Positions 13,795 through 64,000 of a DNA stretch of 64,000 bases are shown piece after piece. The notes under the pieces were generated by a model that worked only from the letters and a program-made list of their open reading frames with translations, had not been told where the DNA came from and made no database searches. Numbering within the stretch: position 1 is the stretch's first letter; each line of letters begins with the position of its first letter. This DNA is from Podarcis melisellensis (Eukaryota): NCBI GenBank assembly GCA_964234715.1, contig OZ174282.1. One strand, given 5' to 3'. The position numbers and the translations under genes were made by a program.

Positions 13795-16020
13795 CCCGCC
13801 ACTTAATGGATCCAATTGGCTTCCAGAGAGTGGTAGGGGATGTTTTATACCAAGTTGATGGCCTTTCAGCTGATTCCCTGGTGGCCCGCTGGAATGCGGA
13901 GTTAACCAGGGCTCTTGACTGTCTGGCTCCGAAGCGCCCTCTCCGATTGCATGGGGCCCAGACAGCCCCGTGTTTTTCCCCGGAGCTGAGGGTGATGAAA
14001 CAATCATTGAGATGGCTAGAGCGCTGGTGGCAGAAAACTCATTCTGAATCAGACCGGACACGGGCTAGAGCTCAACGTCGAGCCTACCAAGTGGCAATGG
14101 CGACGGCGAAGAGGGCCTTCTTCACCGCCTCCATTGCATCTGCAGAAAACAGTAGCAGGAGACTTTTTCAGGTGGTTCGCAATCTATCGGAACCACCTGC
14201 ACCACCGGGGCCTGGTAGGGACCCCAAGATCTCCTGCAATGCTTTTGCAAAGTTCTTTGCAGATAAAGTCACTCAGATTCAGAAGGAGGTAGACTCCACC
14301 GTGGGAGCAGGGCCAGGGTGGGAGAGTGCTAGAGTTCTGTCTAGTCCTGTTACATGGGATGGATCGATTCCAATCTGTTACTTCCGAGGATGTGGACAGG
14401 CTGCTTAGACAAGTGAAACCGACCACCTGTCTCCTTGATCCTTGCCCATCCTGGCTGATAAAAGCAATTCGGGAAGGGCTGGGCAATGGGCTCTGCGGGG
14501 TGGTGAATGCTTCCCTCTGTGAGGTAGCCTTCCCAGACCTGATGAAAGAGGCGGTCATTAAATGGCTTCTTAAAAAAACATCTTTAGACCCAGCCAATTT
14601 GGCCAACTATCGCCCAGTCTCAAATTTACCATTCTTGGGCAAGGTGATTGAGCAGGTGGTTGCCAAACAACTCCAAGCACGCCTGGAGGATGCAGACCAT
14701 TTGGATCCCTTCCAATCGGGATTCAAGCCTCACCATGGGACTGAAACTGCCTTGGTCGTGCTGGTTGATGATCTCCAGTGGACTAGGGACAAGGTGAGAG
14801 CTGTTTCCTAGTTCTGTTGGATCTCTCAGCGGCCTTTGACACCATCGACCATAGCATCCTTCTGGACCATCTAGAGGGGCTGGGAGCTGGGGGCACTGTT
14901 ATACGGTTGTTCCGCTCCTTTCTCCTGGGCCGTGTCCAGAAAGTGGTGGTGGGGGATGAGTGTTCAGACCCCTGAGCTCTCACTTGTGGGGTGCCTCAGG
15001 GTTCCGTCCTCTACCCCATGCTTTTTAATATCTATATGAAGCCGCTGGGAGAGATCATTAGGGGGTTTGGGCTGGGTGTTCATCAGTATGCAGATGACAC
15101 CCAGCTCTACCTCTCCTTTAAATCAGAACCAGTGAAGGCGGTGAAGGTCCTGTGTGAGTGCCTGGAGGCTGTTGGAGGATGGATGGCGGCTAACAGATTG
15201 AGGTTGAATCCTGACAAGACAGAAGTACTGTTTTGGGGGGACAGGGGGCGGGCGAGTGTGGGGGATTCCCTGGTCCTGAATGGGGTAACTGTGCCCCTGA
15301 AGGACCAGTCCAAAATGACTCCCAGCTGTCCATGGAGGCACAGGTTAATTCTGTGTCCAGACAGCTGTCTACCAGCTCCACCTGGTACGCAGGCTATGAC
15401 CCTACCTGCCCGCGGACTGTCTTGCCAGAGTGGTGCATGCTCTAGTTATCTCCCGCTTGGACTACTGCAACACGCTCTACGTGGGGCTACCTTTGAAGGT
15501 GACCCAGAAACTGCAATTAATCCAGAATGCGGCAGCTAGACTGGTGACTGGGAGTGGCCACCGGGACCACATAACACCAGTTCTGAGAGATCTGCATTGG
15601 CTCCCAGTACGTTTCCGAGCACAATTCAAAGTGTTGGTGCTGACCTTTAAAGCCCTAAATGCCCTTGGTCCTGTATACCTGAAGGAGCGTCTCCAAACCC
15701 ATCGTTCAGCCCGGACACTGAGATCCAGTGCCGAGGGCCTTCTGGTGGTTCCCTCATTGCGAGAAGTAAGGTTACAGGGAACCAGGCAGAGGGCCTTCTC
15801 GGTAGTGGCGCCCACACTGTCGAATGCCATCCCATCAGATGTCAAAGCAATAAACAACTATTTTACTTTTAAAAGACAACTGAAGGCAGTCCTCTTTAGG
15901 GAAGTTTGTAATGTCTGATGCTGTACTGTTTTTAATATTCAGTTGGAAGCCGCCCAGAGTGACTGGGGAAACCCAGCCAGATGGGCGGGGTATAAATAAT
16001 AAATTATGATGATGATGATA
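13795..16020 (+). mobile_element. L2 LINE, 5'-truncated ORF2 with frameshifts and stops, 3' tail intact
   Basis: Fragmented ORFs with [71 protein letters not shown] and LHWLPV; ends gggtataaataataaattatgatgatgat. Confidence 0.95.
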
Positions 16021-39480: not shown

Positions 39481-41774
39481 ACGGTTATGTGCTCTAACAT
39501 GCTTCAAATCATCCCAGAAATACCCCCCTTTGCCCCCCTTCCAAGTGAGAAAGAGGCATTATCAGAGTTCAATGACACATTGCAGCTGTGCAAAAAGCCA
39601 CAAGGAAAGCAGGACGGGAGAGGGGTGTTACTTGGGCAGGTGCATGGCCTTGGGAGAATCCTGAAGGCCATGTAAGAGAAGCCAGGGGTGCTACATTTGG
39701 CCTTCAGCCCTGCAGTTCCCCGCTCCTGTTTTAGACTAAGATGAAACAGCAACAGATTTGAAATCTGCCAAAAGACGACGACAAAAATATGTGGGGTGGG
39801 GAGAGAAGATGGGAGTCGTGTCAGCTGTGCACTGTGCCAGGTGTTGACTTCATTAGCATTGCAAATCCCACAGTCGGATACACAGGAGATATTCTTTTCA
39901 GGAGAAGTTTAGATGGAAATGTAATTAGAACCTGTAAAGTAAGTGCTAGGAAGCGCCGTCTTGTAAGGTTGCGTATTAATATGAGGCTGAGTCAAAACTG
40001 TTCTTACCATTTCGTGTTCTTTCATATATATATATTTTAAAAAATGTCATCAGTGTTTTTATCTCCCTCCCCTTGCCTTGAAATTATGGTAATTTCAGTT
40101 TGACTGTTTTAAACACAGTAGGTCTGAGAACCTGCAGTGAAATTTCACTAGAAAATGCAGCACTTGGTGGGTACTGCGTCTTTTTGTGTGTGTCAAGAAC
40201 AGCAAGTACAGCAAACTTTTTTAAGTCTTGAAGTCGTTCTGGAAAATAGTAATGAGATGACATGGCAAAGCATTCTGGGAATTATACATTTGTGGTGAGC
40301 ACCATTCAGAATGAAGCTTAGCGCCAAGGTCACACTACAAATCTTTCCCCTAACATATGCATTTTTGTAAACAGTGTTTGGTTTGCGAAATTCTTTGTAA
40401 AATTTGGATAAGTGCCAATTTTGTTTTGCGTATTATTTTGGAAAGTGTGCGTTTGAGAGATTTGGGTTTAAATGAGACCTGTATCAAATTTCTCCTCCAT
40501 CCCTGGTCTGGACAAACTGGTTGAAGTGCTCCACTTCAGAATTGTGGCTCTTGAGATTCTTCCTCCATCCCTTGGTTATGGCTCACATGCAAAACACATA
40601 ATTCACAAGCAGAAGGTCCCAAGTTCAAGCTCTAGCTCAAAGGATTGGGCAGCACCCCTGGGAAAGACCGGTGTCACAAATCCAGGAGATTTTCTGCCAC
40701 TCAGGATAGACAATATTGGACTGGATGTTTCAGTGATCTCATTCATACTTTGGGGTAAAATTTCACCACCACCTACTTCAATTTCTAAATGAAATCAGTA
40801 GAACTTAAACATGCTTAACACTGTCTGGATTCTATCCATCATCTGCCGATCTATTTATCTATCCTCTAGGCCAAAAAAACAAGCACAGTAAAGAAAGGCT
40901 GAGTCATAATAATAAGCTGCATCTCCGTTAGAGACTTTTCTGTGATCAAATTAGAGGGAAAGTGTTAAGTGCAAGGGAAGCAGGGAGGTGTTCACTTGGG
41001 AATAGCTTGGTTAATATACGGGGCTGCTTTAAACCCACTGCAAGTGTAATTTACGCTTTGACCTTTCTTCCTGCCTTTGCCAGCCAGGTTTCCTAAGCAT
41101 TCCAGTAAGACCTGACAGATTAATCATCTGCTTCGGACCACAGCCCACTAGAGACATAATATGCTGAGCCTGCTTTGTTTGACAGACCACAGCTCCAGCG
41201 CTATGCTTGAGGGCAGCTTGGCAGCCACTTCCTGCTAGGAATGGAGATGGCGTGCAAAGGAATGTTGCTTAAACACCATACATTCTTGCCATCCCTGTTT
41301 AACCAACTTCCTTTCAAGGGAATAGGATCCAGCTGAAAACACAAGACCCTTGGGTCTGACCTGTTCACAAGAAAATTTTACGGGGGGGGGGGGTGTGCAT
41401 CTTCAAGCAGATATGATATTCAAATTAAGAAACATGGTTGTTGTTTTTAAAAACCTGCTTCTGCAATATAATTAAAATGATGTATCACACCCCAACAGTG
41501 CTCACCATCAATTCCCCTTTTTTATTTTTTATAACGCTTGGCACTGAGTGACTAGGCAGCAGCCATCTTGATTTCCTACTATGATCCCAAGGGCTGCCTT
41601 TTTAACTTTCCACACTTCTCCAGAGATATGCTATACCAGGGACATTTGAAGCCCTGGGCTGTCCTCTGTTGAAAAGAACTCTTGAGCAATAGGCAGCTTT
41701 ATATAGGAATATCAGATCTGTCTCAATTGTAAGCTCCGCTTTTATTAAAAGGTGCCTCTTCAAGTAAAGGGCCC

Positions 41775-42204
41775 TGATCGTGTCCAGAGGAGGGCAACCA
41801 AAATGGTCAAAGGCCTGGAAACGATGCCCTATGAGGAACGGCTAAGGGAGCTGGGCATGTTTAGCCTGAAGAAGAAGAGGTTAAGGGGTGATATGATAGC
41901 CATGTTCAAATATATAAAAGGATGTCACATAGAGGAGGGAGAAAGGTTGTTTTCTGCTGCTCCAGAGAAGCGGACATGGAGCAATGGATCCAAACTACAA
42001 GAAAGAAGAATCCACCTAAACATTAGGAAGAACTTCCTGACAGTAAGAGCTGTTCGACAGTGGAATTTGCTGCCAAGGAGTGTGGTGGAGTCTCCTTCTT
42101 TGGAGGTCTTTAAGCAGAGGCTTGACAACCTTGGCAGTTTCCTGCTTGGCAGGGGGTTGGACTTGATGGCCCTTGTGGTCTCTTCCAACTCTAGGATTCT
42201 ATGA
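41775..42204 (+). mobile_element. CR1 LINE 3' end (young)
   Basis: Open frame RVQRRATKMVKGLETMPYEERLRELGMFSLKKKRLRGDMI...FLTVRAVRQWNLLP; ends tcttccaactctaggattctatgat. Confidence 0.93.
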
Positions 42205-46539: not shown

Positions 46540-47456
46540 GGTATGACCCAGTCAATGCATATGGAGCGTTGCTTTAGAAGAAAATTTCCACGTGATATGT
46601 CTCTGGGACACTTTTCAGGAATTCCATCTTTTAAATATGTACGTGTGTTTATTGATTACTACTGTAATAGTGGTACTCAGGTACTTAAAACCGACTGCCG
46701 CATTCCACAAGTCTGGTCTAAGACATTTTGCTCCCTGAGGTGGAATTGCCCCATCAGTTCAACCGCCACAACTCAAGGTACATAAACAGCTGTGCCTGGT
46801 GCAGAAAATCACACAACTGCCTCTCCATTTCCCTAGCAGTAAAAATCTAACAGTAATAAATAAAGGAAGGGAGCATTTGCTATCCTTTCAGGAAACCCAA
46901 AACTGTTTTTTGGGCGGCAGCTGTCTTACTCTGCCTAATGAAAAAGCTGGCCCTGCCATGTCAATTACATTCTTGCATGGATCTTTACATTCTCTCCTGT
47001 GAGAATGGTCAATTCAGTCAACAGATTCAGAAAACAAAAACAAAACCCTGATCTGCCAGGCCTGGAACCACCATCATTTCAGAGTGAAGGTGGATGCCTG
47101 AACAATTCCATCCTCTCCTTCACCATGTCAAAGTTCATGGCACATTAAAAGCTTTGGTTAGAAAATTTATCAGTGCAAAACTGTGTGCAAATGGCCTCTC
47201 TGGTATGGGGTGTGGTTGAGAGATTGCTTGTTATTGTTACTGCACAGCTGATAGACGGAGAAAGTAATTTAAAAAATAATAATACAACATAAGCAGCTTA
47301 AAACTCTCCTGTAGAACAGGTCTGCTTGCTTATGGACCACAAATCAAAGGGAAGTTTGGATGTACTGGGGCTGCAGGAGGCTCAAAAAGCTGCTTAGTTT
47401 GCTGTGGCTTCAAAAATGGTGGTTTTGTCAAGTATCTGATAGGCCACAACAGATGA

Positions 47457-48324
47457 TTGCGTGGACAGGCAGAGTCCCCAGATCCCGCGCGGTCCCCCCG
47501 TCATGTGGAATAACGACTCAAGACAACGTGCTATGGGATTAAATTGGCCACAACTTTATTAAATTTCAAATGTGGGTAGACCTTGGCTCAGGCATTGGGC
47601 GTTCTCCCTCCCCAGTCCCCAGCCGGGGACCTAGGGAGCATCAGGGTTATCCAGTGTGTGTGTGTGGGGGGGGTGGGCCGGCTCTGGAGAACATATGTTC
47701 AAGCAGAGATAGCCGCCCCCGTAACGCCGCCGCCGCAGGGGAGAGCAATGACGACCTTTCGGCGTACGGTCAAAGCCTCCCTTCAGAAAACCCCTTTAAC
47801 GGGGAACCCTGGTATCGCCACCACAAAGAGGAAGATGGACAAAAGGATTCCGCCCAAGGCCTGATACCGCCAAAGTTGTGACGTTTTGCTACGGGAAAGG
47901 CGAAACCTGCCAATGCAGGGAAATTCCTTTCCGGCCCTTTAACAGCGACCTTAACATAGCAGCGCCCGCATACCTGTGAAGAAAAGTTAATCTGCAAAAC
48001 CTGTGAGGAAAAATTAACCTGCAAAATAAGACATTAACTGAGGGTGGGTAGGGTGGGAGAAGCTCTGGAGCCAAGTGAGAATTCCCAGGTAAGATCTTCC
48101 CTCCTTTGTGTGGGCAGGTAATCCCTCCCCTACCTGGCCTGGTCTCCTTGGCAACTCTTCCCCCAGGTGGGATTGGACAACTGACTGAGGTAGGCGGAGA
48201 CCTCCAGATATCCCACCTGAGGGAAGGCAAAGCCAAGGCAAAGCGGCTGTTGGAGCCGCTCCAGATCTAGGGCCTGCACGTGTCCACGCAAAGGGCACCC
48301 CCCGTTTTAAGCGGGGAGCGGTCA
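47457..48324 (-). mobile_element. ~870-bp CpG-rich LTR-like / putative DIRS-Ngaro-type non-coding element
   Basis: Abrupt GC/CpG-rich island; minus-strand AATAAA (tttatt at 47555-47560); TTGCGTGGACA at 47457-47467 inverted with TGTCCACGCAA at 48281-48291; ATTG at both boundaries (47456-47459, 48324-48327); homology to the 58943 element. Confidence 0.65.
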
Positions 48325-51300
48325 TTGATGGATAAGTTCTGGTTTGGTGCACTGCAAGTTTGTAGATCTGGCCCATGGCTGGAGATATGCTACAGAAAGG
48401 AAGATATCAGCTAACATTTGGATTTATTGTACATCTGAATAATACAAATTCCCATATTTCTTTTGGGGAAATAACTTAATCCTTCAGTGGCTCCGCACCT
48501 CTGACTCTGAAATGCATAGTACAATCCAAGCAGGTTTTCTCAGCAGCACGTACCACTGAGCTCTGTGTAGTTTACTCCTTAGAAACTGCACTTCCTCTGC
48601 TCAATGGGTTGACAGTGGTCTTATTCTTTAGAAGGAGTTATATATTTTTCTACTTGGGTCAGATGACTTGGCCTCGGAGGACAGCTGCTTATGAATCCCA
48701 GATGGATTTTTAATCATCGTTATGGTGCAGTGTTGTATGGATAGTGAGAGCCTATTATGAAATAGTTTTAGGAGTCAATAGGCTGTTTCCATTCTGGAGA
48801 ATTTCATTAAATGCAGTTTGTAGCTATTTGGATTATATTATACTAAACATTTAAAGTAGCCTCACTCTCACTGGCTTCAGAGTAGTCTAGAGAGCCACTT
48901 ATCCGTATCATAATTGAATGTTTTCAAATCAATATAAATTTTCAGAGTCTTTCCTGATCAGCCTACAACTTCATAATAATTTTATTTATAATAATATATT
49001 TATGGTAAAATTATAGTGAGCTAATAATAACTTTAAAAAATGCTAGTAAGAAGCTAAATTTATTTCTGGTGGAAGCTAATTTCAATTCCTGAAAAATAAG
49101 TGAGGTCAATTTGGAAATGATTAAAATTGTGCTTTCAGAAGCCTTCTCTTAGTCAGATGAATGGCTTGCCAAGGCTAAATAAAATCTATCTCATGCAGTT
49201 TCATAAAAATATAGGAGGACAGTGGTCTTTCCTGAAGTGACATAGAACTGGAGTAACCCAAAGCATAGGAGTAACAGTGTTCTCCATACGTTCTTGACTA
49301 CAACTTCCATAATCCCTGATCATTTCCCATGCTGGCTGGGGCTGCTGAGAGTTGTTGTCCAACCACATGGAGAGCACCATGTTGACTACTCCTGACTTAG
49401 GAAGAATCCCTTACCAGGTGCAGAGTCAAGCCTAGTTCTACCGTTGTCACTCCTGCTATGGGGACATAGTGAACATCCAGCAGACCAGAGGCAGACCAGC
49501 TCTCCATTTCCTATCATTGCATCATCATAACAGGCAATGCAGCATAGAACTAAGACTGTCAGACCAAGACCAGAGTTCAAATCTCTCTTCAACCATGAAG
49601 TTCACTTCATCAGTTTGCCTGCTCCAGAAAAAAAAGGGCTTAGAAAAAGCTTGCTCATTTCATTTAGAAATAGAGGGTTGTATCCAACTAAGTTATATTC
49701 TACTTAGACCTGCTGGAATTAATGTATCTAAATTAGCCATAGCCATTAATTTGAATGGGCCCACTCTGAGTAGAACTTAGTTAGCTACCATCCACAGTTT
49801 TCATTGGCTGTGCTGCCAACCCCAATGCATTTTTGGTGCAAAAAATGAGAAATGCACAACGCAGTAGCCCTCTTTCAGTGTTCAACGGCATCCTGGAGAG
49901 CTCATATTGTGTCGTGGCATGGGTGCATCATGTGCCGCCTGCAAGCCCATCTCTCCTCTCCTGTCCTTGGTGCGTTCAAAGCAAAGACCTGACTGCATTG
50001 CAGCTGAATCCTTCCCACAATCAGCAGCACAGTGCAATCAGTCTTCCCAATCAGTGCTCTGTGTTGAGCAGAATATGGTTAGAATATTCCTGCTGGCTTT
50101 GTCATGGAATGCATGAAGGTTGAGAGAGGAGAAAATGAGGCCAGTGTATGCAAGAATGTTGAGAGTGGGGGCTTATGAATATATACCCCTTTCCTAGTTT
50201 GACCCGCTCTCCCCATCTTCTGAAGGACTGAAAATGGTTAGTGGTATCCTTACATACGTTTATGTTACCAAATGTCACCAGAGGAGAGATGGTGAGAGGA
50301 TGGAGACTTGATAACAGCTCCACTTCTTTGGAACTGCCTTCCTGGAGAATTCCAGTTCCAATCCCTAAATTGGAAAGTTTCTGGGAAACTCTGCCATATG
50401 TTCTTGTTTAGAAAGACCCTTTGAAATATTCTGGACATTTTAGAATTTGCATGAATGCAGCCATTTATATGTTCTGTCCCATGAGGCGTTAGAATAATCA
50501 GGATTCTTTTGGATACTTAGGGGGTAGTCAGTTTAAGATTCTGTTTAAGGCTTATTTTACATTTGCTTTCTGGTTTTGACATCCTGGTGCAATTACATTA
50601 AGCCTTGGAGTTTGTTTATTAAGAATGCATCAGTAAAGCTGGGAAAAAACACACAAAACTTTCCAAGTCTCTCAGTGCAAAGAGCCTCAAGAGAACCAAA
50701 CACATAGTCCCAGAATCCTACATGGAGACAAAGCGAATTTCACATAAAAACATGCTATTCAAAAATGTTGATTGCAAGCTCAGTGTAATTAGTGTGGCTT
50801 GAGTATCCATTGCTAATTGTTCTCAGCCATCGTGAAGTCTGGGCATTCATGAACAGCCACCGCATTCAGTTTTAATTACTGAGTGAGTTGTTATCATAAA
50901 CATCCCTCGGTGATTACTAAACCCCAGCAACGGAAGCCTGTTTTAAGAAGATTTAGGCACACACACACACATACACACACATTGTTGAACATTCTGGGTT
51001 AAATGCCATTTAAAAACCCAGAGTAGGCCTCTTGCTGAAAGCTGCTCATTAGGAAATATATCATCCTGTCTATAGGAGAAATAACTTTGCAATTTTCCTC
51101 CCACACGTGTTAAGAGTCTATCCTGAGCAGCGCAAAATATTGTCATGCAAGGGAAAACCATAGCATTACTTTTAAGAAACAAAAACAAAAACAAAAAACC
51201 CTACCTAGGCTTTGATTTTTAATCTGGCTGTTTGTGAATGTGTAGGCTGGCCTAGCACGGGGGTCGCAGAGCCATTTTAATTTCATGAGGAAGAAACTGA

Positions 51301-57009: not shown

Positions 57010-57662
57010 GTGGATGGCCACACTGACTCAGCCCCGGACACACTGACCAGATACTTGAAAGCTGTGGCTGGATGGTTTCATGGGAGCCGATTGAAACTAA
57101 ATCCTTCAAAGAAAGAGGTCCTCTGGCTGGGTTGGGATGGTATGGGGATGAGGGAACAACTCCCTTTTCTTGTGGGGGCCCAATTAGTGCCATTGCCTTC
57201 CGTTAAGAGTTCGGGTGTAATCCTTGACACCTCCCTTTCCATGGAGGCGCAGGTTACAGCAACAGCCAAGGCGACATTTTTCCACCTTCACCGCATCAAG
57301 CAGTCGGTCCCTTACCTTTCCCGCCCTGATCTGGCCACAGTGATCCATGCAACGGTCACCTCCAGGCTTGACTACTGTAATTCGCTCTACGCGGAGCTGC
57401 CCTTGAAGCTGTCCCAGAAACTCCAGAGGGTGCAGAATGCCGCAGTGAGGCTCCTCACGGGGTGTCTGCCATGGGAGCATATTCACCCAGTGCTTTTCCA
57501 GCTGCACTTGCTCCCGGTGGAGTACAGGGTCAGATTTAAGGTGCTGGTTTTGACCTTTAAAGTCCTTCACAGCCTAGGACCCTCGTACCTATGGGACCGC
57601 CTCTCCCGGTATGCCCCACGGAGGACCTTAAGGTCCATAAATAGCAACACCCTAGAGGTCCT
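57010..57662 (+). mobile_element. Internal L2 ORF2 fragment (post-RT region), truncated at both ends
   Basis: Open 218-aa frame with RLKLNPSKKEVL, SRLDYCNSLY, LQRVQNAAVRLL and RVRFKVLVLTFK, homologous to 15190-15750; no L2 3' tail. Confidence 0.9.
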
Positions 57663-58696: not shown

Positions 58697-59340
58697 ATGC
58701 ATAAAGACAGGAAAATTATTGTTGAATGTTTTGCACGTGGAAGCAGCTTCATGGGAGAATTCAAATAAATTGAGGAGGAGAAAGAAATACAATTAGCAGC
58801 ATTGGCAGGGTATTTTTGTTTTAAAAAATGTATTAAAATGTACAAATATGCACCTTTTTAATGCAATTGTTTCCTCAGCTAATGTCTCTTTCCTGAATTA
58901 GTCAAGAATTACCTACTTAAAGTAAAAAGCAACATTTCCAGTTGCGTGTCGAGGTCCCCAAGCCACCCCTCAAATAACTCACAACACAAACATAATTTTT
59001 GTTTAAGGTTTTTCAACTTTATTGAAATACATAAATGTGAGTGGTTGCTTAGGCATTGGTTATGACAATCTGTTCCCCCGCCTGGGGACAGAACTGACTT
59101 CCGGGTACCACCGAAAGCCAGTATAAGGGAAAAACAATATTGGGGAGAAGGAGCTGAGTCACAGACCCTCACCTCTCCCCGCATGCTCCCCAGGGCTTGC
59201 CGGCCCTAGGCCCATTCCAGGGATTCAGACAAAAAGATGGCAAGCCCCTGAATTCCTTTAATGGAATTTCCCTTTCCGCAGCAACCATGGAGGGGCAGGC
59301 CCAGCCAATCCTAACCCCTCCTCCAACCAATTGATAACCA

Positions 59341-62300
59341 ATGCCTAAGCGCAACCTTACAAGTTGCGACGATTTGCTACGCAGTAGGCAAAAACCAAAT
59401 GGCCTAGCCAATCGGCCAGATGGACTAAATTCTTACCAGGCCCCTGCCCCAACAGTAGACGACCCCATGACAGGCATAGCAAGGTCAACACAAACCGATA
59501 AAATTAGGGCGGGTTGGCGGGTGTTCCGTAGCTCGCAGCGAAAGAGCACAGGATTTAAAACATCTGATCCCATTGTATTAAAAAAAAGACTCTGGAATGA
59601 AAAGAAGGAGAAGATCTTGGAGAAAATAAGAGAAGGAGAGAGAAAACTGAGATCCAGGCCTAAATCGAAGGAAGTATTGAGAGAAGTGAAGTTTTTCCAG
59701 GCACAATATTCGAAACTGATAAATCAAGAGGTGGAATGGAAAATTAAACAAATGAAACAAAGATCCTTTGAATCTGCAAACAAATGTGGAAAATTGTTAG
59801 CCTGGCAGTTGAAAAAGAGACAAAAACTTAACACAGTTACAAATCTAGAGATTGAAGGGAGAATGGTTCAGAAACCCGATGAAATCAGAAGGTCCTTTCA
59901 GAAATATTTTAAAGAACTCTATTCTCAAAGGCCACAAAAAAGCTCAGAGGTGGACCAATTTGTTATAACTAATGGATTACAAAAAATACCCCAGGAAATG
60001 AGAGCAACCCTGAACTGTAATATCACAACCCAAGAAATTGAATGCGCCATCCAGAACCTCCAACTGGGCAAATCTCCGGGACCTGATGGGCTTACTTCCA
60101 AATATTATAAGGTACTGAAGGACTCATTGACACAACCATTGCTGGAAGTTTGCAACCAGATTATGGAGGGGAGGAAGGCACCGGAAACGTGGAAAGAAGC
60201 CTTCATCACGTTGATCTTAAAACTAGAATCTGAAAAAACTCAACTTAAAAACTACCGTCCTATCTCACTCCTAAATGTGGATTATAAAATTTTTGCAGAC
60301 ATTTTGGCAAGTAGGTTTAAGAAAGTCTTAAATGAAGTTATTCATAAGGACCAAGCAGGCTTTCTCCCTGGTAGGCATTTATTTGACAACACAAGAAACA
60401 TCATTGACATTTTGGAGTTTTTACAGATTAATTCAAACACAAGAGCGGTGTTGATCTTTATTGATGCGGAGAAGGCCTTTGACAACATTTCTTGGCTGTT
60501 TATGAAGAAAAATTTGGAAAGGATGGGAGTAGGGCGGGGGTTTGAAAATGGAATAGAAGCAATTTATTCAGAACAAAAGGCCAAATTGATAGTAAACAAC
60601 GTGGTGACAGAGGAGTTTAAAATTGAAAAAGGGACACGACAGGGGTGCCCTCTATCTCCTCTGCTGTTTATTTCAGTCCTGGAGGTGCTACTGAACATGA
60701 TTAGAAACGACCGGTTGACACAGGGAATTGTGGTCGGAGAGAAACAATATAAACTGAAAGCTTTCGCAGATGACTTGGTATTAACATTACAGGAGCCAGC
60801 CTCTAGTACTAAAAGAGCGTTAGAATTAATTTCTGATTTTGGTCGGGTGGCGGGATTCAAGCTGAATAAACAAAAAACTAAAGTTTTAGCAAAAAACTTG
60901 ACAACTACTGAAATAGAGGAGTTCAGAAAAGAAACAGAACTAAATGTGGTTAAAAAAGTAAAGTACCTAGGGGTGCACTTGACCTCCAAAAATTTGAATT
61001 TATTTAAGGACAACTATGAGAAATGTTGGTCAGAGATAAAAAGAGATTTGGAAACATGGTCAAGATTAAAACTTTCCTTGTTGGGCAGAATAGCTGCTAT
61101 AAAGATGAATGTATTGCCGAAAATGCTATTTTTGTTTCAGTCCCTCCAGATCGTGGATAAGGTGGAATGTTTTGGAAAATGGCAGAGGGATTTATCCAAA
61201 TTTGTCTGGCAGGGCAAAAAGCCCCGAATAAAGTTTAAAATACTAACAGATGCGAAAGAAAGAGGGGGGTTTGCCCTGCCGGACTTGAGGTTATATTACG
61301 AAGCTGCAGCCCTCTGCTGGTTGAAGGATTGGATCCTATTGGAGAACACCGATGTCCTTGACCTGGAGGGATTTGATAATGCTTTTGGGTGGCATGCATA
61401 TTTGTGGTATGACAAGGTTAAAGTTCATAAATTGTTCAAAAACCATATTGTCAGAAGGACAATTTTCATGGTCTGGTCAAAATATAAAGACTTATTGGAG
61501 AGTAAAACTCCGAGGTGGCTCTCACCGATGGAGGCTAAAGCACGTAAAAGACTCAATATGGAGGCCCACTGGCCTAAATATTGGGAAATAATTGAAAAAA
61601 TTGGAGATAAATGGAGGTTACAGAGTATGGAAAAGTTAAAAAACAAGGTGCGAGATTGGTTGCATTATGCTCAAATCCAGGAAGTTTTTAAAGCAGACAA
61701 AAAAGTGGGTTTTCAGGAGGAAAAATCGAAACTAGAAACAGAGTTGCTTGAGCCAAAATCCAAGCTAATTTCGAGAATGTATAACTTGCTGCTTAAATGG
61801 AACACACAGGATGAGATTGTCAAATCCTCTATGATAAAGTGGGCACAGGACTTGGGGCATAACATTATGTTTGAAGACTGGGAAAGGTTATGGAACACCG
61901 GAATGAAATTTACGGCATGTACTGCCTTGAAGGAAAACATTATGAAAATGATATACCGGTGGTACATGACCCCAGTCAAGCTTGCAAAGATATATCACCT
62001 GTCTGATAATAAATGCTGGAAATGTAAGGAAGAGGAAGGGACATTTTTACACCTCTGGTGGATCTGCCCGAAAGTGAAGGCCTTCTGGGAAATGATACAT
62101 AATGAACTAAAAAAGGTGCTGAGATTCACCTTACCTAAGAAACCGGAGGCCTTCCTTCTGGGCATGGTAGACCAGAGGATGGTCAAGAAAGATAGAACTT
62201 TCTTTATGTACGCTACTACAGCAGCGAGGATTCTGTTGGCAAAGCACTGGAAGACACAAAATCTACCCACATTGGAAGAATGGCAGACGCAGCTGATGGA

Positions 62301-62421
62301 CTATATGGAGTTGGCTGAAATGACTGGCAGAATTCGAGACTCGGGAGAAGAAGAAACGGAGGAAGTTTGGAAAAATTTTAAGGACTATTTGAAAAAGCAT
62401 TATAAGTTGTATGAATGTTAA
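59341..62421 (+). CDS. L1 ORF2 reverse transcriptase plus C-terminal CCHC; first ~77 codons come from the flanking element and TSD, not from L1
   Basis: Motifs KSPGPDG, YRPISLLNVDYKIFA, IDAEKAFD, GTRQGCPLSPLLF, FADD, KYLG and CWKC-x8-HLWWIC; no APE endonuclease motifs. Confidence 0.9.
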   Translation: MPKRNLTSCDDLLRSRQKPNGLANRPDGLNSYQAPAPTVDDPMTGIARSTQTDKIRAGWRVFRSSQRKSTGFKTSDPIVLKKRLWNEKKEKILEKIREGERKLRSRPKSKEVLREVKFFQAQYSKLINQEVEWKIKQMKQRSFESANKCGKLLAWQLKKRQKLNTVTNLEIEGRMVQKPDEIRRSFQKYFKELYSQRPQKSSEVDQFVITNGLQKIPQEMRATLNCNITTQEIECAIQNLQLGKSPGPDGLTSKYYKVLKDSLTQPLLEVCNQIMEGRKAPETWKEAFITLILKLESEKTQLKNYRPISLLNVDYKIFADILASRFKKVLNEVIHKDQAGFLPGRHLFDNTRNIIDILEFLQINSNTRAVLIFIDAEKAFDNISWLFMKKNLERMGVGRGFENGIEAIYSEQKAKLIVNNVVTEEFKIEKGTRQGCPLSPLLFISVLEVLLNMIRNDRLTQGIVVGEKQYKLKAFADDLVLTLQEPASSTKRALELISDFGRVAGFKLNKQKTKVLAKNLTTTEIEEFRKETELNVVKKVKYLGVHLTSKNLNLFKDNYEKCWSEIKRDLETWSRLKLSLLGRIAAIKMNVLPKMLFLFQSLQIVDKVECFGKWQRDLSKFVWQGKKPRIKFKILTDAKERGGFALPDLRLYYEAAALCWLKDWILLENTDVLDLEGFDNAFGWHAYLWYDKVKVHKLFKNHIVRRTIFMVWSKYKDLLESKTPRWLSPMEAKARKRLNMEAHWPKYWEIIEKIGDKWRLQSMEKLKNKVRDWLHYAQIQEVFKADKKVGFQEEKSKLETELLEPKSKLISRMYNLLLKWNTQDEIVKSSMIKWAQDLGHNIMFEDWERLWNTGMKFTACTALKENIMKMIYRWYMTPVKLAKIYHLSDNKCWKCKEEEGTFLHLWWICPKVKAFWEMIHNELKKVLRFTLPKKPEAFLLGMVDQRMVKKDRTFFMYATTAARILLAKHWKTQNLPTLEEWQTQLMDYMELAEMTGRIRDSGEEETEEVWKNFKDYLKKHYKLYEC

Positions 62422-62760
62422 AAAATGCTCCTTTTTAGGAAGGTATAGCTTCAGTATCGGCAAATTTCTGAATTGATAAATAAGACACTATAAGACAGAA
62501 GTGAGGTAACGAAATATTTTTATTGTGTGGAAATTAAAAATTAATGCAATTGTATCGAAATGTTTACATCAGATAACACGATAAAATGGAAGATATATTG
62601 GTATGTATAAAACAAGTCAACAAATTGCTGAGGTTTTGGTTACACAGGGAATGTAGTGCTCGGGAGATGGGGGAAGTCCATTGGATTCATGGAAGTATGT
62701 ATTTGAAAGTGGAAATTTGTTTATTAAAAACCTAATAAAATATTTATAAAAAAAAAAAAA
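59572..62760 (+). mobile_element. L1-clade LINE, 5'-truncated (no endonuclease domain), young
   Basis: TSD TAAAACATCTGATCCC at 59556-59571 and 62761-62776; L1-type TT/AAAA target; uninterrupted ORF2 to stop at 62421; 3' UTR with AATAAA at 62734-62739 and A13 tail at 62748-62760. Confidence 0.96.
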
Positions 62761-64000
62761 TAAAACATCTGATCCCTCCCACCAAATTGCAACATAGAAT
62801 TTACTCCAGCAACCCAGCCATCCAATCGTTGCCACAGGCTTCCATAGGAATCCTGCCTGGCAACAGGGGTTGCCTGGTAAACCCCACTGCAACACGTGCT
62901 CTCCATGAGGGAGAACATGCTTTATGCCCACACCACTGCCACCCCAATGGAGAGAGCTGGAAATGTTGGTTGTGTGTATGCCTGTGTTTGCTGTATGTTA
63001 ATGAGAGAAAAAGAGAGAGAGAGATTGATTGTGTAACTGCATATAAATTGGCCCCTGCTGGCATGTGACCCTTGGAAGGGTGGTTGACCATCAGTGCAGA
63101 CCTTGGGCTGGAAAGAGTATATAATTTCTATATGTGACAGTGCAATACTGGAAGTAATTATCTACAAACATACACACCTCAGCACAACCACTGTTACGTA
63201 TGCACTCTGCATCCATCTGCAATTAACAGTGATTTTTTTAAAAATAAAAAACTTCCTCAGTAAACAACTGGAATGAGCCTTAAAGTACCCAATCTACTCT
63301 GCACTGCAATGTAGCTCTTCATCACACTCCCATTATTTTCCTCCTACTTGTGCTTTACTGCTCTCTTACCACCTCCGTTTTATAACCCCACTTTAATGAG
63401 TCATTATTAAACTTTTCCCAGCCTAGACCAACTTTAAAAAAATGACTCCTTGCAGGCAGACAGTCTATAGCATCCCCTGGTGAGTGACTTGCAGGCTCTG
63501 GAGTTCATAATTATGGGAATGACAAAGAAAACATATAAACACTTTTTATAGGAATCCTCTAGTGGCTGTGGCCTGGCATGTAAAACGTCAGCAGACTTTA
63601 TACCTTTAGGGATTATTTGCAGGGGTGGGAAGTTGTTGTTCCTCTAACTTTTTATTCTGCTTAAAAAATGAAAAACAAAAACAAAACCTCACTGTGTTAA
63701 GCTTGAAAATGTGGATCATATTGATGTGGGGGACTTTTGCAAATTGTATGTGACTTCCCCCCACCTCATCTGCTCCTGAAGATTCCAGCCAGGAGAAAGG
63801 ACATTAAAACATGAATGTGTGCATAAAATATCCACTTAAATCAAAGCAGCATAACAAGTATTCATCACCACATTTTGCTGATGCACAGGTTAGTGTTATC
63901 TGTAGTCTTACAAAGCAGTGAATTCTTTGCTAAAGAATCTTATACGAACTTGGACGTGCTGGATAAGCGATTCAAGAGCTGAACTGTTAGATGATCTAAA

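What the first reader, a model, noticed from the sequence alone, without database searches (positions are those of the whole stretch)
47456..48327. Non-coding element whose ends form a nested hairpin only when circularised: candidate non-autonomous tyrosine-recombinase (DIRS/Ngaro-like) element
Seen: the ~870-bp CpG-rich element has no classical TSD, but ATTG occurs at both boundaries (47456-47459, 48324-48327). Its 11-bp inverted repeat is asymmetric: one arm is terminal (TTGCGTGGACA, 47457) and the other lies ~33 bp inside the opposite end (TGTCCACGCAA, 48281). Joining the ends through ATTG gives TGTCCACGCAA-agggc-[ACC-CCCCG-ttttaag-CGGGG-agc-GGT]-ca-TTGCGTGGACA, a compact outer stem enclosing an inner hairpin, with the junction at its base. 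Known: DIRS/Ngaro retrotransposons integrate via tyrosine recombinase, probably from circles, without TSDs, and integron attC and CTX phage sites are folded ssDNA substrates of tyrosine recombinases. Inference: this is a solo or non-autonomous YR-mobilised element whose attachment site is a folded circle junction.
Basis: partly seen in the sequence, partly recalled or inferred. Interest (0 to 1): 0.75.

Follow-up and report, generated by a model that had tools for sequence, protein, structure and literature searches.

The report
Non-coding lizard transposon with hairpin ends
This is one decayed copy of an 871-base non-coding jumping gene found in thousands of copies in wall-lizard genomes; its ends look most like those of tyrosine-recombinase retrotransposons (Ngaro/DIRS), but a rolling-circle (Helentron-type) origin is not excluded, so it belongs to known kinds, not a new class.

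Summary
The unit 47456-48326 is a discrete, CpG-rich, non-coding dispersed repeat. Contigs from two other lizard species pile up by the thousand inside it and break off at 47456/47457 and 48326 into unrelated flanks.

- **Ends:** the family-defined unit starts and ends with ATT.
- **Inverted repeat:** it is genuine, 11 nt perfect and 36 nt at 75%. One arm is terminal; the other is followed by a 35-nt extension carrying a hairpin.

- A perfect 4-bp direct repeat (GATG) also flanks the unit, so a target-site duplication (TSD) is not excluded from this one copy.
- The same arms pair in the linear strand.

Best reading (about 0.5): a non-autonomous "A-core-B" unit of the lizard Ngaro/DIRS-order tyrosine-recombinase retroelements. 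It lacks both split direct repeats and an internal complementary region.

Main rival (about 0.2): a non-autonomous Helentron (HINE), whose published end architecture fits equally well.

The same scan has noted look-alike elements elsewhere in this genome. The folded-ssDNA attachment-site mechanism remains speculation.

The parts
47456..48326 (-). Whole 871-bp non-coding unit. Family-defined boundaries; sense strand taken as minus.
   Evidence: contigs of runs X1 and X3 lie only inside; loose ends at 47456/47457 and 48326; flanks unlike each other; no coding signal.
47456..47458 (+). Terminal trinucleotide ATT, left end.
   Evidence: A at 47456 is shared by the 47456 pile: 21 contigs in X1 (a pile of 20 starts at 47457) and 28 in X3, the only left-end pile listed there.
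48324..48326 (+). Terminal trinucleotide ATT, right end.
   Evidence: 30 (X1) and 37 (X3) contigs end their match exactly at 48326.
47457..47492 (.). Left arm of the inverted repeat; sits at the terminus.
   Evidence: I1; pair classes.
48256..48291 (.). Right arm of the inverted repeat; subterminal.
   Evidence: I1.
48292..48326 (.). 35-nt one-sided extension. It holds a 9-bp hairpin (48296-48304 paired with 48312-48320) and is itself nearly palindromic.
   Evidence: The family majority G at 48297 restores a pair.
47555..47560 (-). AATAAA on the minus strand, 99 nt before the 3' end, followed by a GU-rich stretch. On the plus strand it reads as a TATA-like box.
   Evidence: It lies in one of only two blocks conserved with the diverged relative.
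47793..47809 (-). Motif GGGT-N4-CGTTAAAGG at a hairpin tip.
Evidence: one match in the window, 0.02 expected.
47866..47895 (-). Core block that pairs with the poly(A)-signal block at 47540-47570.
   Evidence: 12-bp helix, -15.5 kcal/mol, 0 of 300 shuffles as good., I14.
47972..48025 (.). Two tandem 27-nt units.
   Evidence: D1 (89% alike). Depth dips and variant loose ends here.
47654..47677 (.). (GT)n followed by a G run.
   Evidence: repeats skipped at 47648-47683.
47452..47455 (.). Flank GATG, left copy of a possible 4-bp target-site duplication.
   Evidence: printed flanks.
48327..48330 (.). Flank GATG, right copy of a possible 4-bp target-site duplication.
58942..62922 (-). Diverged relative (e2), split by an L1 insertion at 59572-62776. 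It shares the terminal TTGCGTG, the two conserved blocks and a hairpin near the other end. Its right end is approximate.

Best explanation
The element is one somewhat decayed copy of a young family with thousands of copies. It is a non-coding, non-autonomous mobile element of wall lizards, derived from the genome's tyrosine-recombinase retroelements (order DIRS, most likely the Ngaro lineage).

Read on the minus strand it has three modules:
- **A**, about 255 nt. It opens with AAT, a 9-bp hairpin and one arm of the inverted repeat.
- **Core**, about 210 nt, holding the 27-nt tandem units and a block that pairs with the poly(A) region.
- **B**, about 400 nt. It holds the conserved hairpin motif, a CCAAT/AATAAA region and the other repeat arm, and ends in AAT.

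Proposed mechanism:
- Inferred: a partner element supplies reverse transcriptase and recombinase.
- Inferred: the DNA copy is closed so that the end of B meets the start of A.
- Inferred, from the published DIRS model: the recombinase crosses over at the shared trinucleotide with an ATT/AAT in the target, leaving that trinucleotide at both ends and no true duplication.

Shown: the joined ends form a strongly self-complementary site (repeat arms around the hairpin). This copy has one A and one B, with no split repeat and no internal complementary region. It is therefore either a recombined 'A-core-B' remnant or a form whose palindromic junction does the job of those repeats.
For: - **Discrete, abundant unit.** Family-level boundaries and heterogeneous flanks; summed depth is 23,000-337,000 inside against 48.5 for a single-copy flank contig in run X1.
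- **Terminal trinucleotide.** The unit starts and ends with ATT. This is the signature of tyrosine-recombinase (YR) retroelements: 23 of 28 DIRS1-like elements begin and end with NTT, most often ATT (PMC3266345). [quoted passage not shown]
- **One-sided extension.** 35 nt follow the right repeat arm and none precede the left, as in most metazoan DIRS1-like termini, where rE is 26-50 nt.
- **Link to lizard Ngaro repeat B.** The motif GGGT-N4-CGTTAAAGG occurs once in the window, inside the element, with 0.02 expected. A 12-bp core-to-poly(A)-block helix is present. Earlier follow-ups describe both for lizard Ngaro repeat B.
- **Conserved blocks.** The AATAAA block and the core block are the only stretches conserved with the diverged relative e2.
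- **Hairpin strand bias.** Hairpin mismatches in e1 and e2 are C-A on the plus strand, that is G.U on the minus-strand RNA.
- **Rare forms without the core.** Joints 47858>48070 and 47872>48076.
- **Precedent.** Isolated AB repeats of Ngaro elements are known (PMC8547959).
- **Non-coding.** Family variants fall 4/6/4 over the three codon positions of the longest internal frame.
Against: - No reverse transcriptase or recombinase gene was seen with these ends.
- The Ngaro label for repeat B rests on earlier AI notes that I could not re-examine.
- Split direct repeats are absent.
- A separate internal complementary region is absent: best internal score 32 against shuffles at 27 +/- 4.
- No end-to-start back-joint is among the joints listed for two genomes.
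- The inverted repeat (36-45 nt, 67-75%) is shorter than published DIRS1-like ITRs of 66-316 bp.
- GATG flanks the unit on both sides, so a 4-bp duplication is possible.
- The whole end architecture also fits non-autonomous Helentrons.
Confidence: 0.5

Rival explanations
1. Non-autonomous Helentron (HINE). A rolling-circle DNA transposon, read on the plus strand and moved by a Rep/helicase/endonuclease partner. It inserts inside TT without a duplication.
For: Every structural hallmark published for HINEs (PMC4067079) is present on the plus strand.
- 5' inverted repeat within 0-2 nt of the end.
- Its partner begins 46 nt from the 3' end (published range 38-60).
- Palindrome 6-11 nt from the 3' end (published range 8-35).
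- Microsatellite and tandem repeats in the middle.
- T runs at both boundaries and T-rich flank consensus. One group of copies reads TTTT before 47457.
- Very high copy number.
- Deletion derivatives that keep both ends, for example joint 47479>48258.
Against: - No Rep/helicase gene was seen.
- The element shares a motif and a helix with what earlier follow-ups call Ngaro repeat B.
- An AATAAA plus GU-rich block on the opposite strand is conserved in the diverged relative.
- Hairpin mismatches are G.U only on the minus strand.
- A at 47456 is shared by most copies, which suits a fixed ATT better than a bare TT.
Confidence: 0.2
2. Solo LTR, or LTR-like unit, of an integrase-type retroelement that makes a 4-bp target duplication (GATG here).
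For: - Overall layout on the minus strand is LTR-like: tandem 27-nt repeats upstream, CCAAT, AATAAA, then about 100 nt to the end.
- TG and CA lie 2 nt inside each end.
- A perfect 4-bp direct repeat sits directly outside the family-defined unit.
Against: - The sequence shared by the family runs 2 nt beyond TG and beyond CA at both ends, so the flanks next to TG/CA are not variable.
- The ends are AATG...CAAT, not an inverted pair.
- One repeat arm is 35 nt inside the end.
- Flank consensus shows no primer-binding site or polypurine tract (agreement 0.36-0.40).
- The locus is GAT-rich. The chance of GATG/GATG is matched by the chance of ATT/ATT, so this copy does not decide.
Confidence: 0.1
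3. DNA-level tyrosine-recombinase element (Crypton-like, non-autonomous), excised and re-inserted as a double-stranded circle with no RNA step.
For: - Same short core at both ends.
- No terminal inverted repeat pair at the very ends.
- Palindromic junction.
Against: - Thousands of near-identical copies need a replicative route.
- A poly(A)-type block is conserved.
- Earlier notes link it to a retroelement repeat.
Confidence: 0.05

Closest known systems
DIRS1-like retrotransposon termini (lITR ... rITR-rE, trinucleotide ends; Piednoel et al. 2011, PMC3266345)
   Same: It begins and ends with ATT. The left repeat arm is at the terminus. The right arm is followed by a 35-nt extension. The junction is self-complementary.
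   Different: It has no genes and no separate internal complementary region. The repeat is only 36-45 nt and imperfect. The extension is itself a hairpin.
Ngaro retrotransposons and their solo AB repeats (PMC9210276, PMC8547959)
   Same: A and B modules are of comparable size. B carries a poly(A) signal. Isolated A-B units lie scattered in the genome. Earlier notes in the same genome describe Ngaro elements with an SGNH ORF.
   Different: This copy has no A1...B1-A2-B2 split repeat. The published descriptions of Ngaro ends that I read do not mention a terminal inverted repeat plus hairpin. The copy number is in the thousands.
HINE / DINE-1, non-autonomous Helentrons (PMC4067079)
   Same: Subterminal inverted repeats with asymmetric offsets, a 3' palindrome, a central microsatellite and tandem repeats, T-run boundaries, no obvious duplication, high copy number.
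   Different: The host is an amniote. A poly(A)-type block is conserved on the opposite strand. The element shares a motif with a retroelement repeat. No Rep/helicase partner was seen.
Folded single-strand recombination sites (integron attC, CTX phage attP)
   Same: A stem made from two imperfect arms, with the exchange point at its base.
   Different: The likeness is one of shape only. Nothing here shows a single-stranded substrate, and the recombinases are unrelated systems.

Membership tests
Ngaro-like (order DIRS) | Split direct repeats A1 ... B1-A2-B2 | tested here: not met
   Self-comparison finds no internal copy of either end. No end-to-start joint is listed in two genomes.
Ngaro-like (order DIRS) | Encodes RT/RNase H and a tyrosine recombinase, or shares its ends with an element that does | not testable with these tools
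The only link is a motif and a helix described in earlier notes.
Ngaro-like / DIRS1-like | Insertion without a target-site duplication | tested here: inconclusive
   ATT at both ends fits a crossover core, but GATG also flanks the unit. Paired flanks of other copies were not obtainable.
DIRS1-like | The same trinucleotide (NTT) at start and end | tested here: met
   ATT at 47456-47458 and 48324-48326, with boundaries fixed by other copies. Compared against PMC3266345 Table 3.
DIRS1-like | Inverted terminal repeats with a one-sided extension | tested here: met
   36 nt at 75%, with a 35-nt right extension and no left one. The repeat is shorter than the published 66-316 bp.
DIRS1-like | Internal complementary region matching both termini | tested here: not met
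   Best internal match scores 32 against shuffles at 27 +/- 4, maximum 39. Only the right terminus itself resembles it.
HINE (non-autonomous Helentron) | 12-15-bp subterminal inverted repeats at asymmetric offsets, plus a 3' palindrome | tested here: met
   10-11 nt perfect core; offsets of 0-2 nt and 46 nt; palindrome 6-11 nt from the end. Criteria from PMC4067079.
HINE (non-autonomous Helentron) | Insertion inside TT, and a Rep/helicase partner with the same ends | tested here: inconclusive
   TT is present at both boundaries and the flanks are T-rich. No partner could be searched for.
Solo LTR of an integrase-type retroelement | TG...CA at the ends, with variable flanks directly outside | tested here: not met
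   The sequence shared by the family extends 2 nt beyond TG and beyond CA.

The most novel reading that the evidence does not exclude
A lineage of tyrosine-recombinase retroelements in lacertid lizards has dropped both split direct repeats and the internal complementary region. In their place it uses a self-complementary junction: a terminal/subterminal inverted repeat around a palindromic 35-nt extension. A single-stranded cDNA would then splint its own ends for closure and present a folded recombination site. This design would let an 871-bp non-coding unit reach thousands of copies.
Probability: 0.15. Interest if true: 0.7.

Novelty: new member of a known kind. Interest (0 to 1): 0.4.

Why it matters
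Non-autonomous derivatives of tyrosine-recombinase retroelements are rarely described, and their integration step has never been reconstituted. A young family with thousands of copies, sharply defined ends and a compact palindromic junction would be a convenient natural substrate for three questions:
- where the recombinase cuts;
- whether the short trinucleotide core is all the target needs;
- whether the junction acts as double-stranded or folded DNA.

If it turns out to be a Helentron derivative instead, it would be, as far as I know, the first Helentron-type family reported in an amniote. For genome annotation, the family makes up roughly a few megabases of wall-lizard DNA and could easily be mislabelled as solo LTRs.

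Tried and rejected
- **My first reading, a solo ERV LTR on the minus strand.** Dropped because the family-shared sequence runs past TG and CA, and the flanks show no PBS or PPT.
- **Other copies in the window.** None apart from the diverged e2.
- **Rfam.** Nothing at gathering level for the window or at E<=1 for the element. So no hammerhead or other known RNA.
- **Word-based protein search with the 115-aa minus-strand ORF.** No hit. Only proteins 0.55-1.75 times that length were candidates, so this says little.
- **Pfam on the window's long ORFs.** Only LINE reverse transcriptases, and the YADD motif confirms LINEs. No Ngaro or Helentron protein to use as a seed.
- **Exact 26-mer scan of metagenome contigs.** Nothing.
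- **The look-up of encoding contigs.** Closed, so no further lizard DNA, no orthologous empty site and no long copies could be fetched.
- **Internal complementary region.** Not found.
- **Coding test of the 103-codon frame that starts at element base 2.** No third-position bias.
- **Literal sequence strings in the paper library.** Only unrelated primer hits.
- **RNA reads of run X23.** They cover both strands at low depth and cross both boundaries, with no start or end pile. They give no orientation.
- **First junction fold.** It dropped one base by my error. It was redone correctly.
Full report
**What is there.** The window is lizard DNA: GC 42%, CpG observed/expected 0.23. Earlier notes of this scan call it a wall-lizard genome.
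- The stretch has CpG observed/expected 0.59.
- It has no ORF with a detectable relative.
- It has no Rfam match.
- The only relative in the window is a strongly diverged one at 58.9-62.9 kb.

**It is a discrete, very abundant mobile element.** I laid Logan contigs from two other lizard species on 47100-48700.
- 3,460 and 3,048 contigs matched, all inside the element.
- Identities run from above 99% to below 90%.
- Loose ends pile up at 47456 or 47457 on the left and at 48326 on the right.
- The loose flanks agree with each other only at 0.36-0.40, which means many independent insertion sites.
- Summed word depth inside is 23,000-337,000 in X1. A 7.2-kb contig covering the right flank without a single difference has depth 48.5.
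- The tool warns that depth is not a copy number. The order of magnitude is thousands of copies.

The unit is therefore 47456-48326, 871 bp. On the plus strand it starts ATTGCG and ends GTCATT.

Where the window copy differs from the family majority, the majority letter usually restores a CpG (47471, 48281, 48297). So this is a somewhat decayed copy of a young family.

**The repeat and the fold.**
- The 11-nt inverted repeat is real and extends to 36 nt at 75%. Over 45 positions it gives 30 Watson-Crick pairs.
- A perfect partner of the terminal 11-mer arose in only 6 of 20,000 shuffles.
- The right arm is followed by a 35-nt extension that carries a 9-bp hairpin. In the family consensus the hairpin has a single C-A mismatch.
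- This is simple arithmetic from a terminal/subterminal repeat. In the fold of the linear strand the same arms pair as a panhandle. 'Only when circularised' is therefore too strong.

**Is there a target duplication?** This copy cannot say.
- ATT lies at both ends of the unit.
- GATG lies directly outside both ends: 47452-47455 and 48327-48330.
- The locus is rich in GAT.
- Under a crossover-core model the GATG match is chance. Under a duplication model the ATT match is chance. The two chances are about equal.
- The models predict different empty sites, but I could not fetch an orthologous site.

**Why I favour a tyrosine-recombinase retroelement derivative.**
- Published DIRS1-like elements begin and end with the same NTT trinucleotide, most often ATT. 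Most metazoan ones have no left extension and a right extension of 26-50 nt after the right inverted repeat (PMC3266345). [quoted passage not shown] The element matches these points.
- Earlier follow-ups in this genome describe a lizard Ngaro repeat 'B' that carries a poly(A) signal, an invariant GGGT-N4-CGTTAAAGG hairpin tip, and a core segment that pairs with the poly(A) region. I found that motif once in the window, inside the element, with 0.02 expected. I also found a 12-bp core-to-poly(A)-block helix; 0 of 300 shuffles were as good.
- The only two blocks conserved with the diverged relative are those two pairing partners, including AATAAAGTTG.
- Hairpin mismatches in both elements are C-A on the plus strand, that is G.U in minus-strand RNA. 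This is weak support for an RNA-level role on the minus strand.
- Two single contigs skip about 205 nt (47858>48070 and 47872>48076). This suggests modules A (about 255 nt), core (about 210 nt) and B (about 400 nt).
- Isolated AB units of Ngaro elements are known (PMC8547959).

**What does not fit.**
- The defining Ngaro split repeats are absent.
- The defining DIRS1 internal complementary region is absent. Only the right terminus, being nearly palindromic, resembles it.
- No end-to-start joint appears among the joints listed for two genomes.
- No partner gene was seen.

**The main rival.** Read on the plus strand, the element meets every structural hallmark published for non-autonomous Helentrons (PMC4067079):
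- a short inverted repeat at the 5' end, with its partner about 46 nt from the 3' end;
- a palindrome a few bases from the 3' end;
- a central microsatellite and tandem repeats;
- T runs at both boundaries;
- no clear duplication, and high copy number.

Deletion derivatives that keep both ends and reported tandem arrays also suit it. Against it stand the conserved poly(A)-type block on the other strand, the link to a retroelement repeat, and the fixed A before TT. Also, I know of no Helentron reported in amniotes (own knowledge).

An integrase-type solo LTR is unlikely. The family-shared sequence runs 2 nt past TG and past CA, and the flanks carry no PBS or PPT.

**Verdict.**
- The folded attachment-site mechanism is speculation.
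- The same scan has flagged look-alike elements elsewhere in this genome (s1-501933, s1-517317, s1-517314). This is one more member of a family already noticed, not a new kind.

Noticed in passing
window 59341-62776: A full-length L1-type LINE sits inside the diverged relative e2. ORF2 is open for 1,026 aa (RVT_1, E 4e-38). It has an A-rich tail and is bracketed by a perfect 15-bp target duplication, AAAACATCTGATCCC, at 59557-59571 and 62762-62776.
   Followed up: partly
window 58930-58941 and 62957-62968: A perfect 12-nt inverted repeat (CAACATTTCCAG / CTGGAAATGTTG). The left arm abuts e2's left end; the right arm lies about 35 nt beyond e2's apparent right end. Either e2 landed in a host palindrome or its true ends differ from e1's. 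Unexplained.
   Followed up: partly
window 13800-15900, 41750-42200, 57010-57660: Broken LINE reverse-transcriptase fragments. They carry the NYRP and YADD motifs (RTE/L2/CR1-like), with several frameshifts.
   Followed up: partly
window 47456-48326 (run X23): RNA reads from the same species label cover both strands of the family at low depth and run across both element boundaries into unrelated flanks. This points to read-through transcription of copies rather than element-defined starts or ends.
   Followed up: no
window 47479>48258, 47479>48069, 47529>48059 (tables 5 and 5c): Single contigs in other species join the first ~25-75 nt of the element to its last ~70-270 nt. These are miniature deletion derivatives that keep both termini.
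   Followed up: no
window 48014-48325, minus strand: A 103-codon open frame starts at the element's second base (ATG). Family variants show no codon-position bias (4/6/4), so it looks accidental. Earlier notes in this genome report 'LTR-encoded' frames that start at the first bases of repeats and may deserve the same test.
   Followed up: partly
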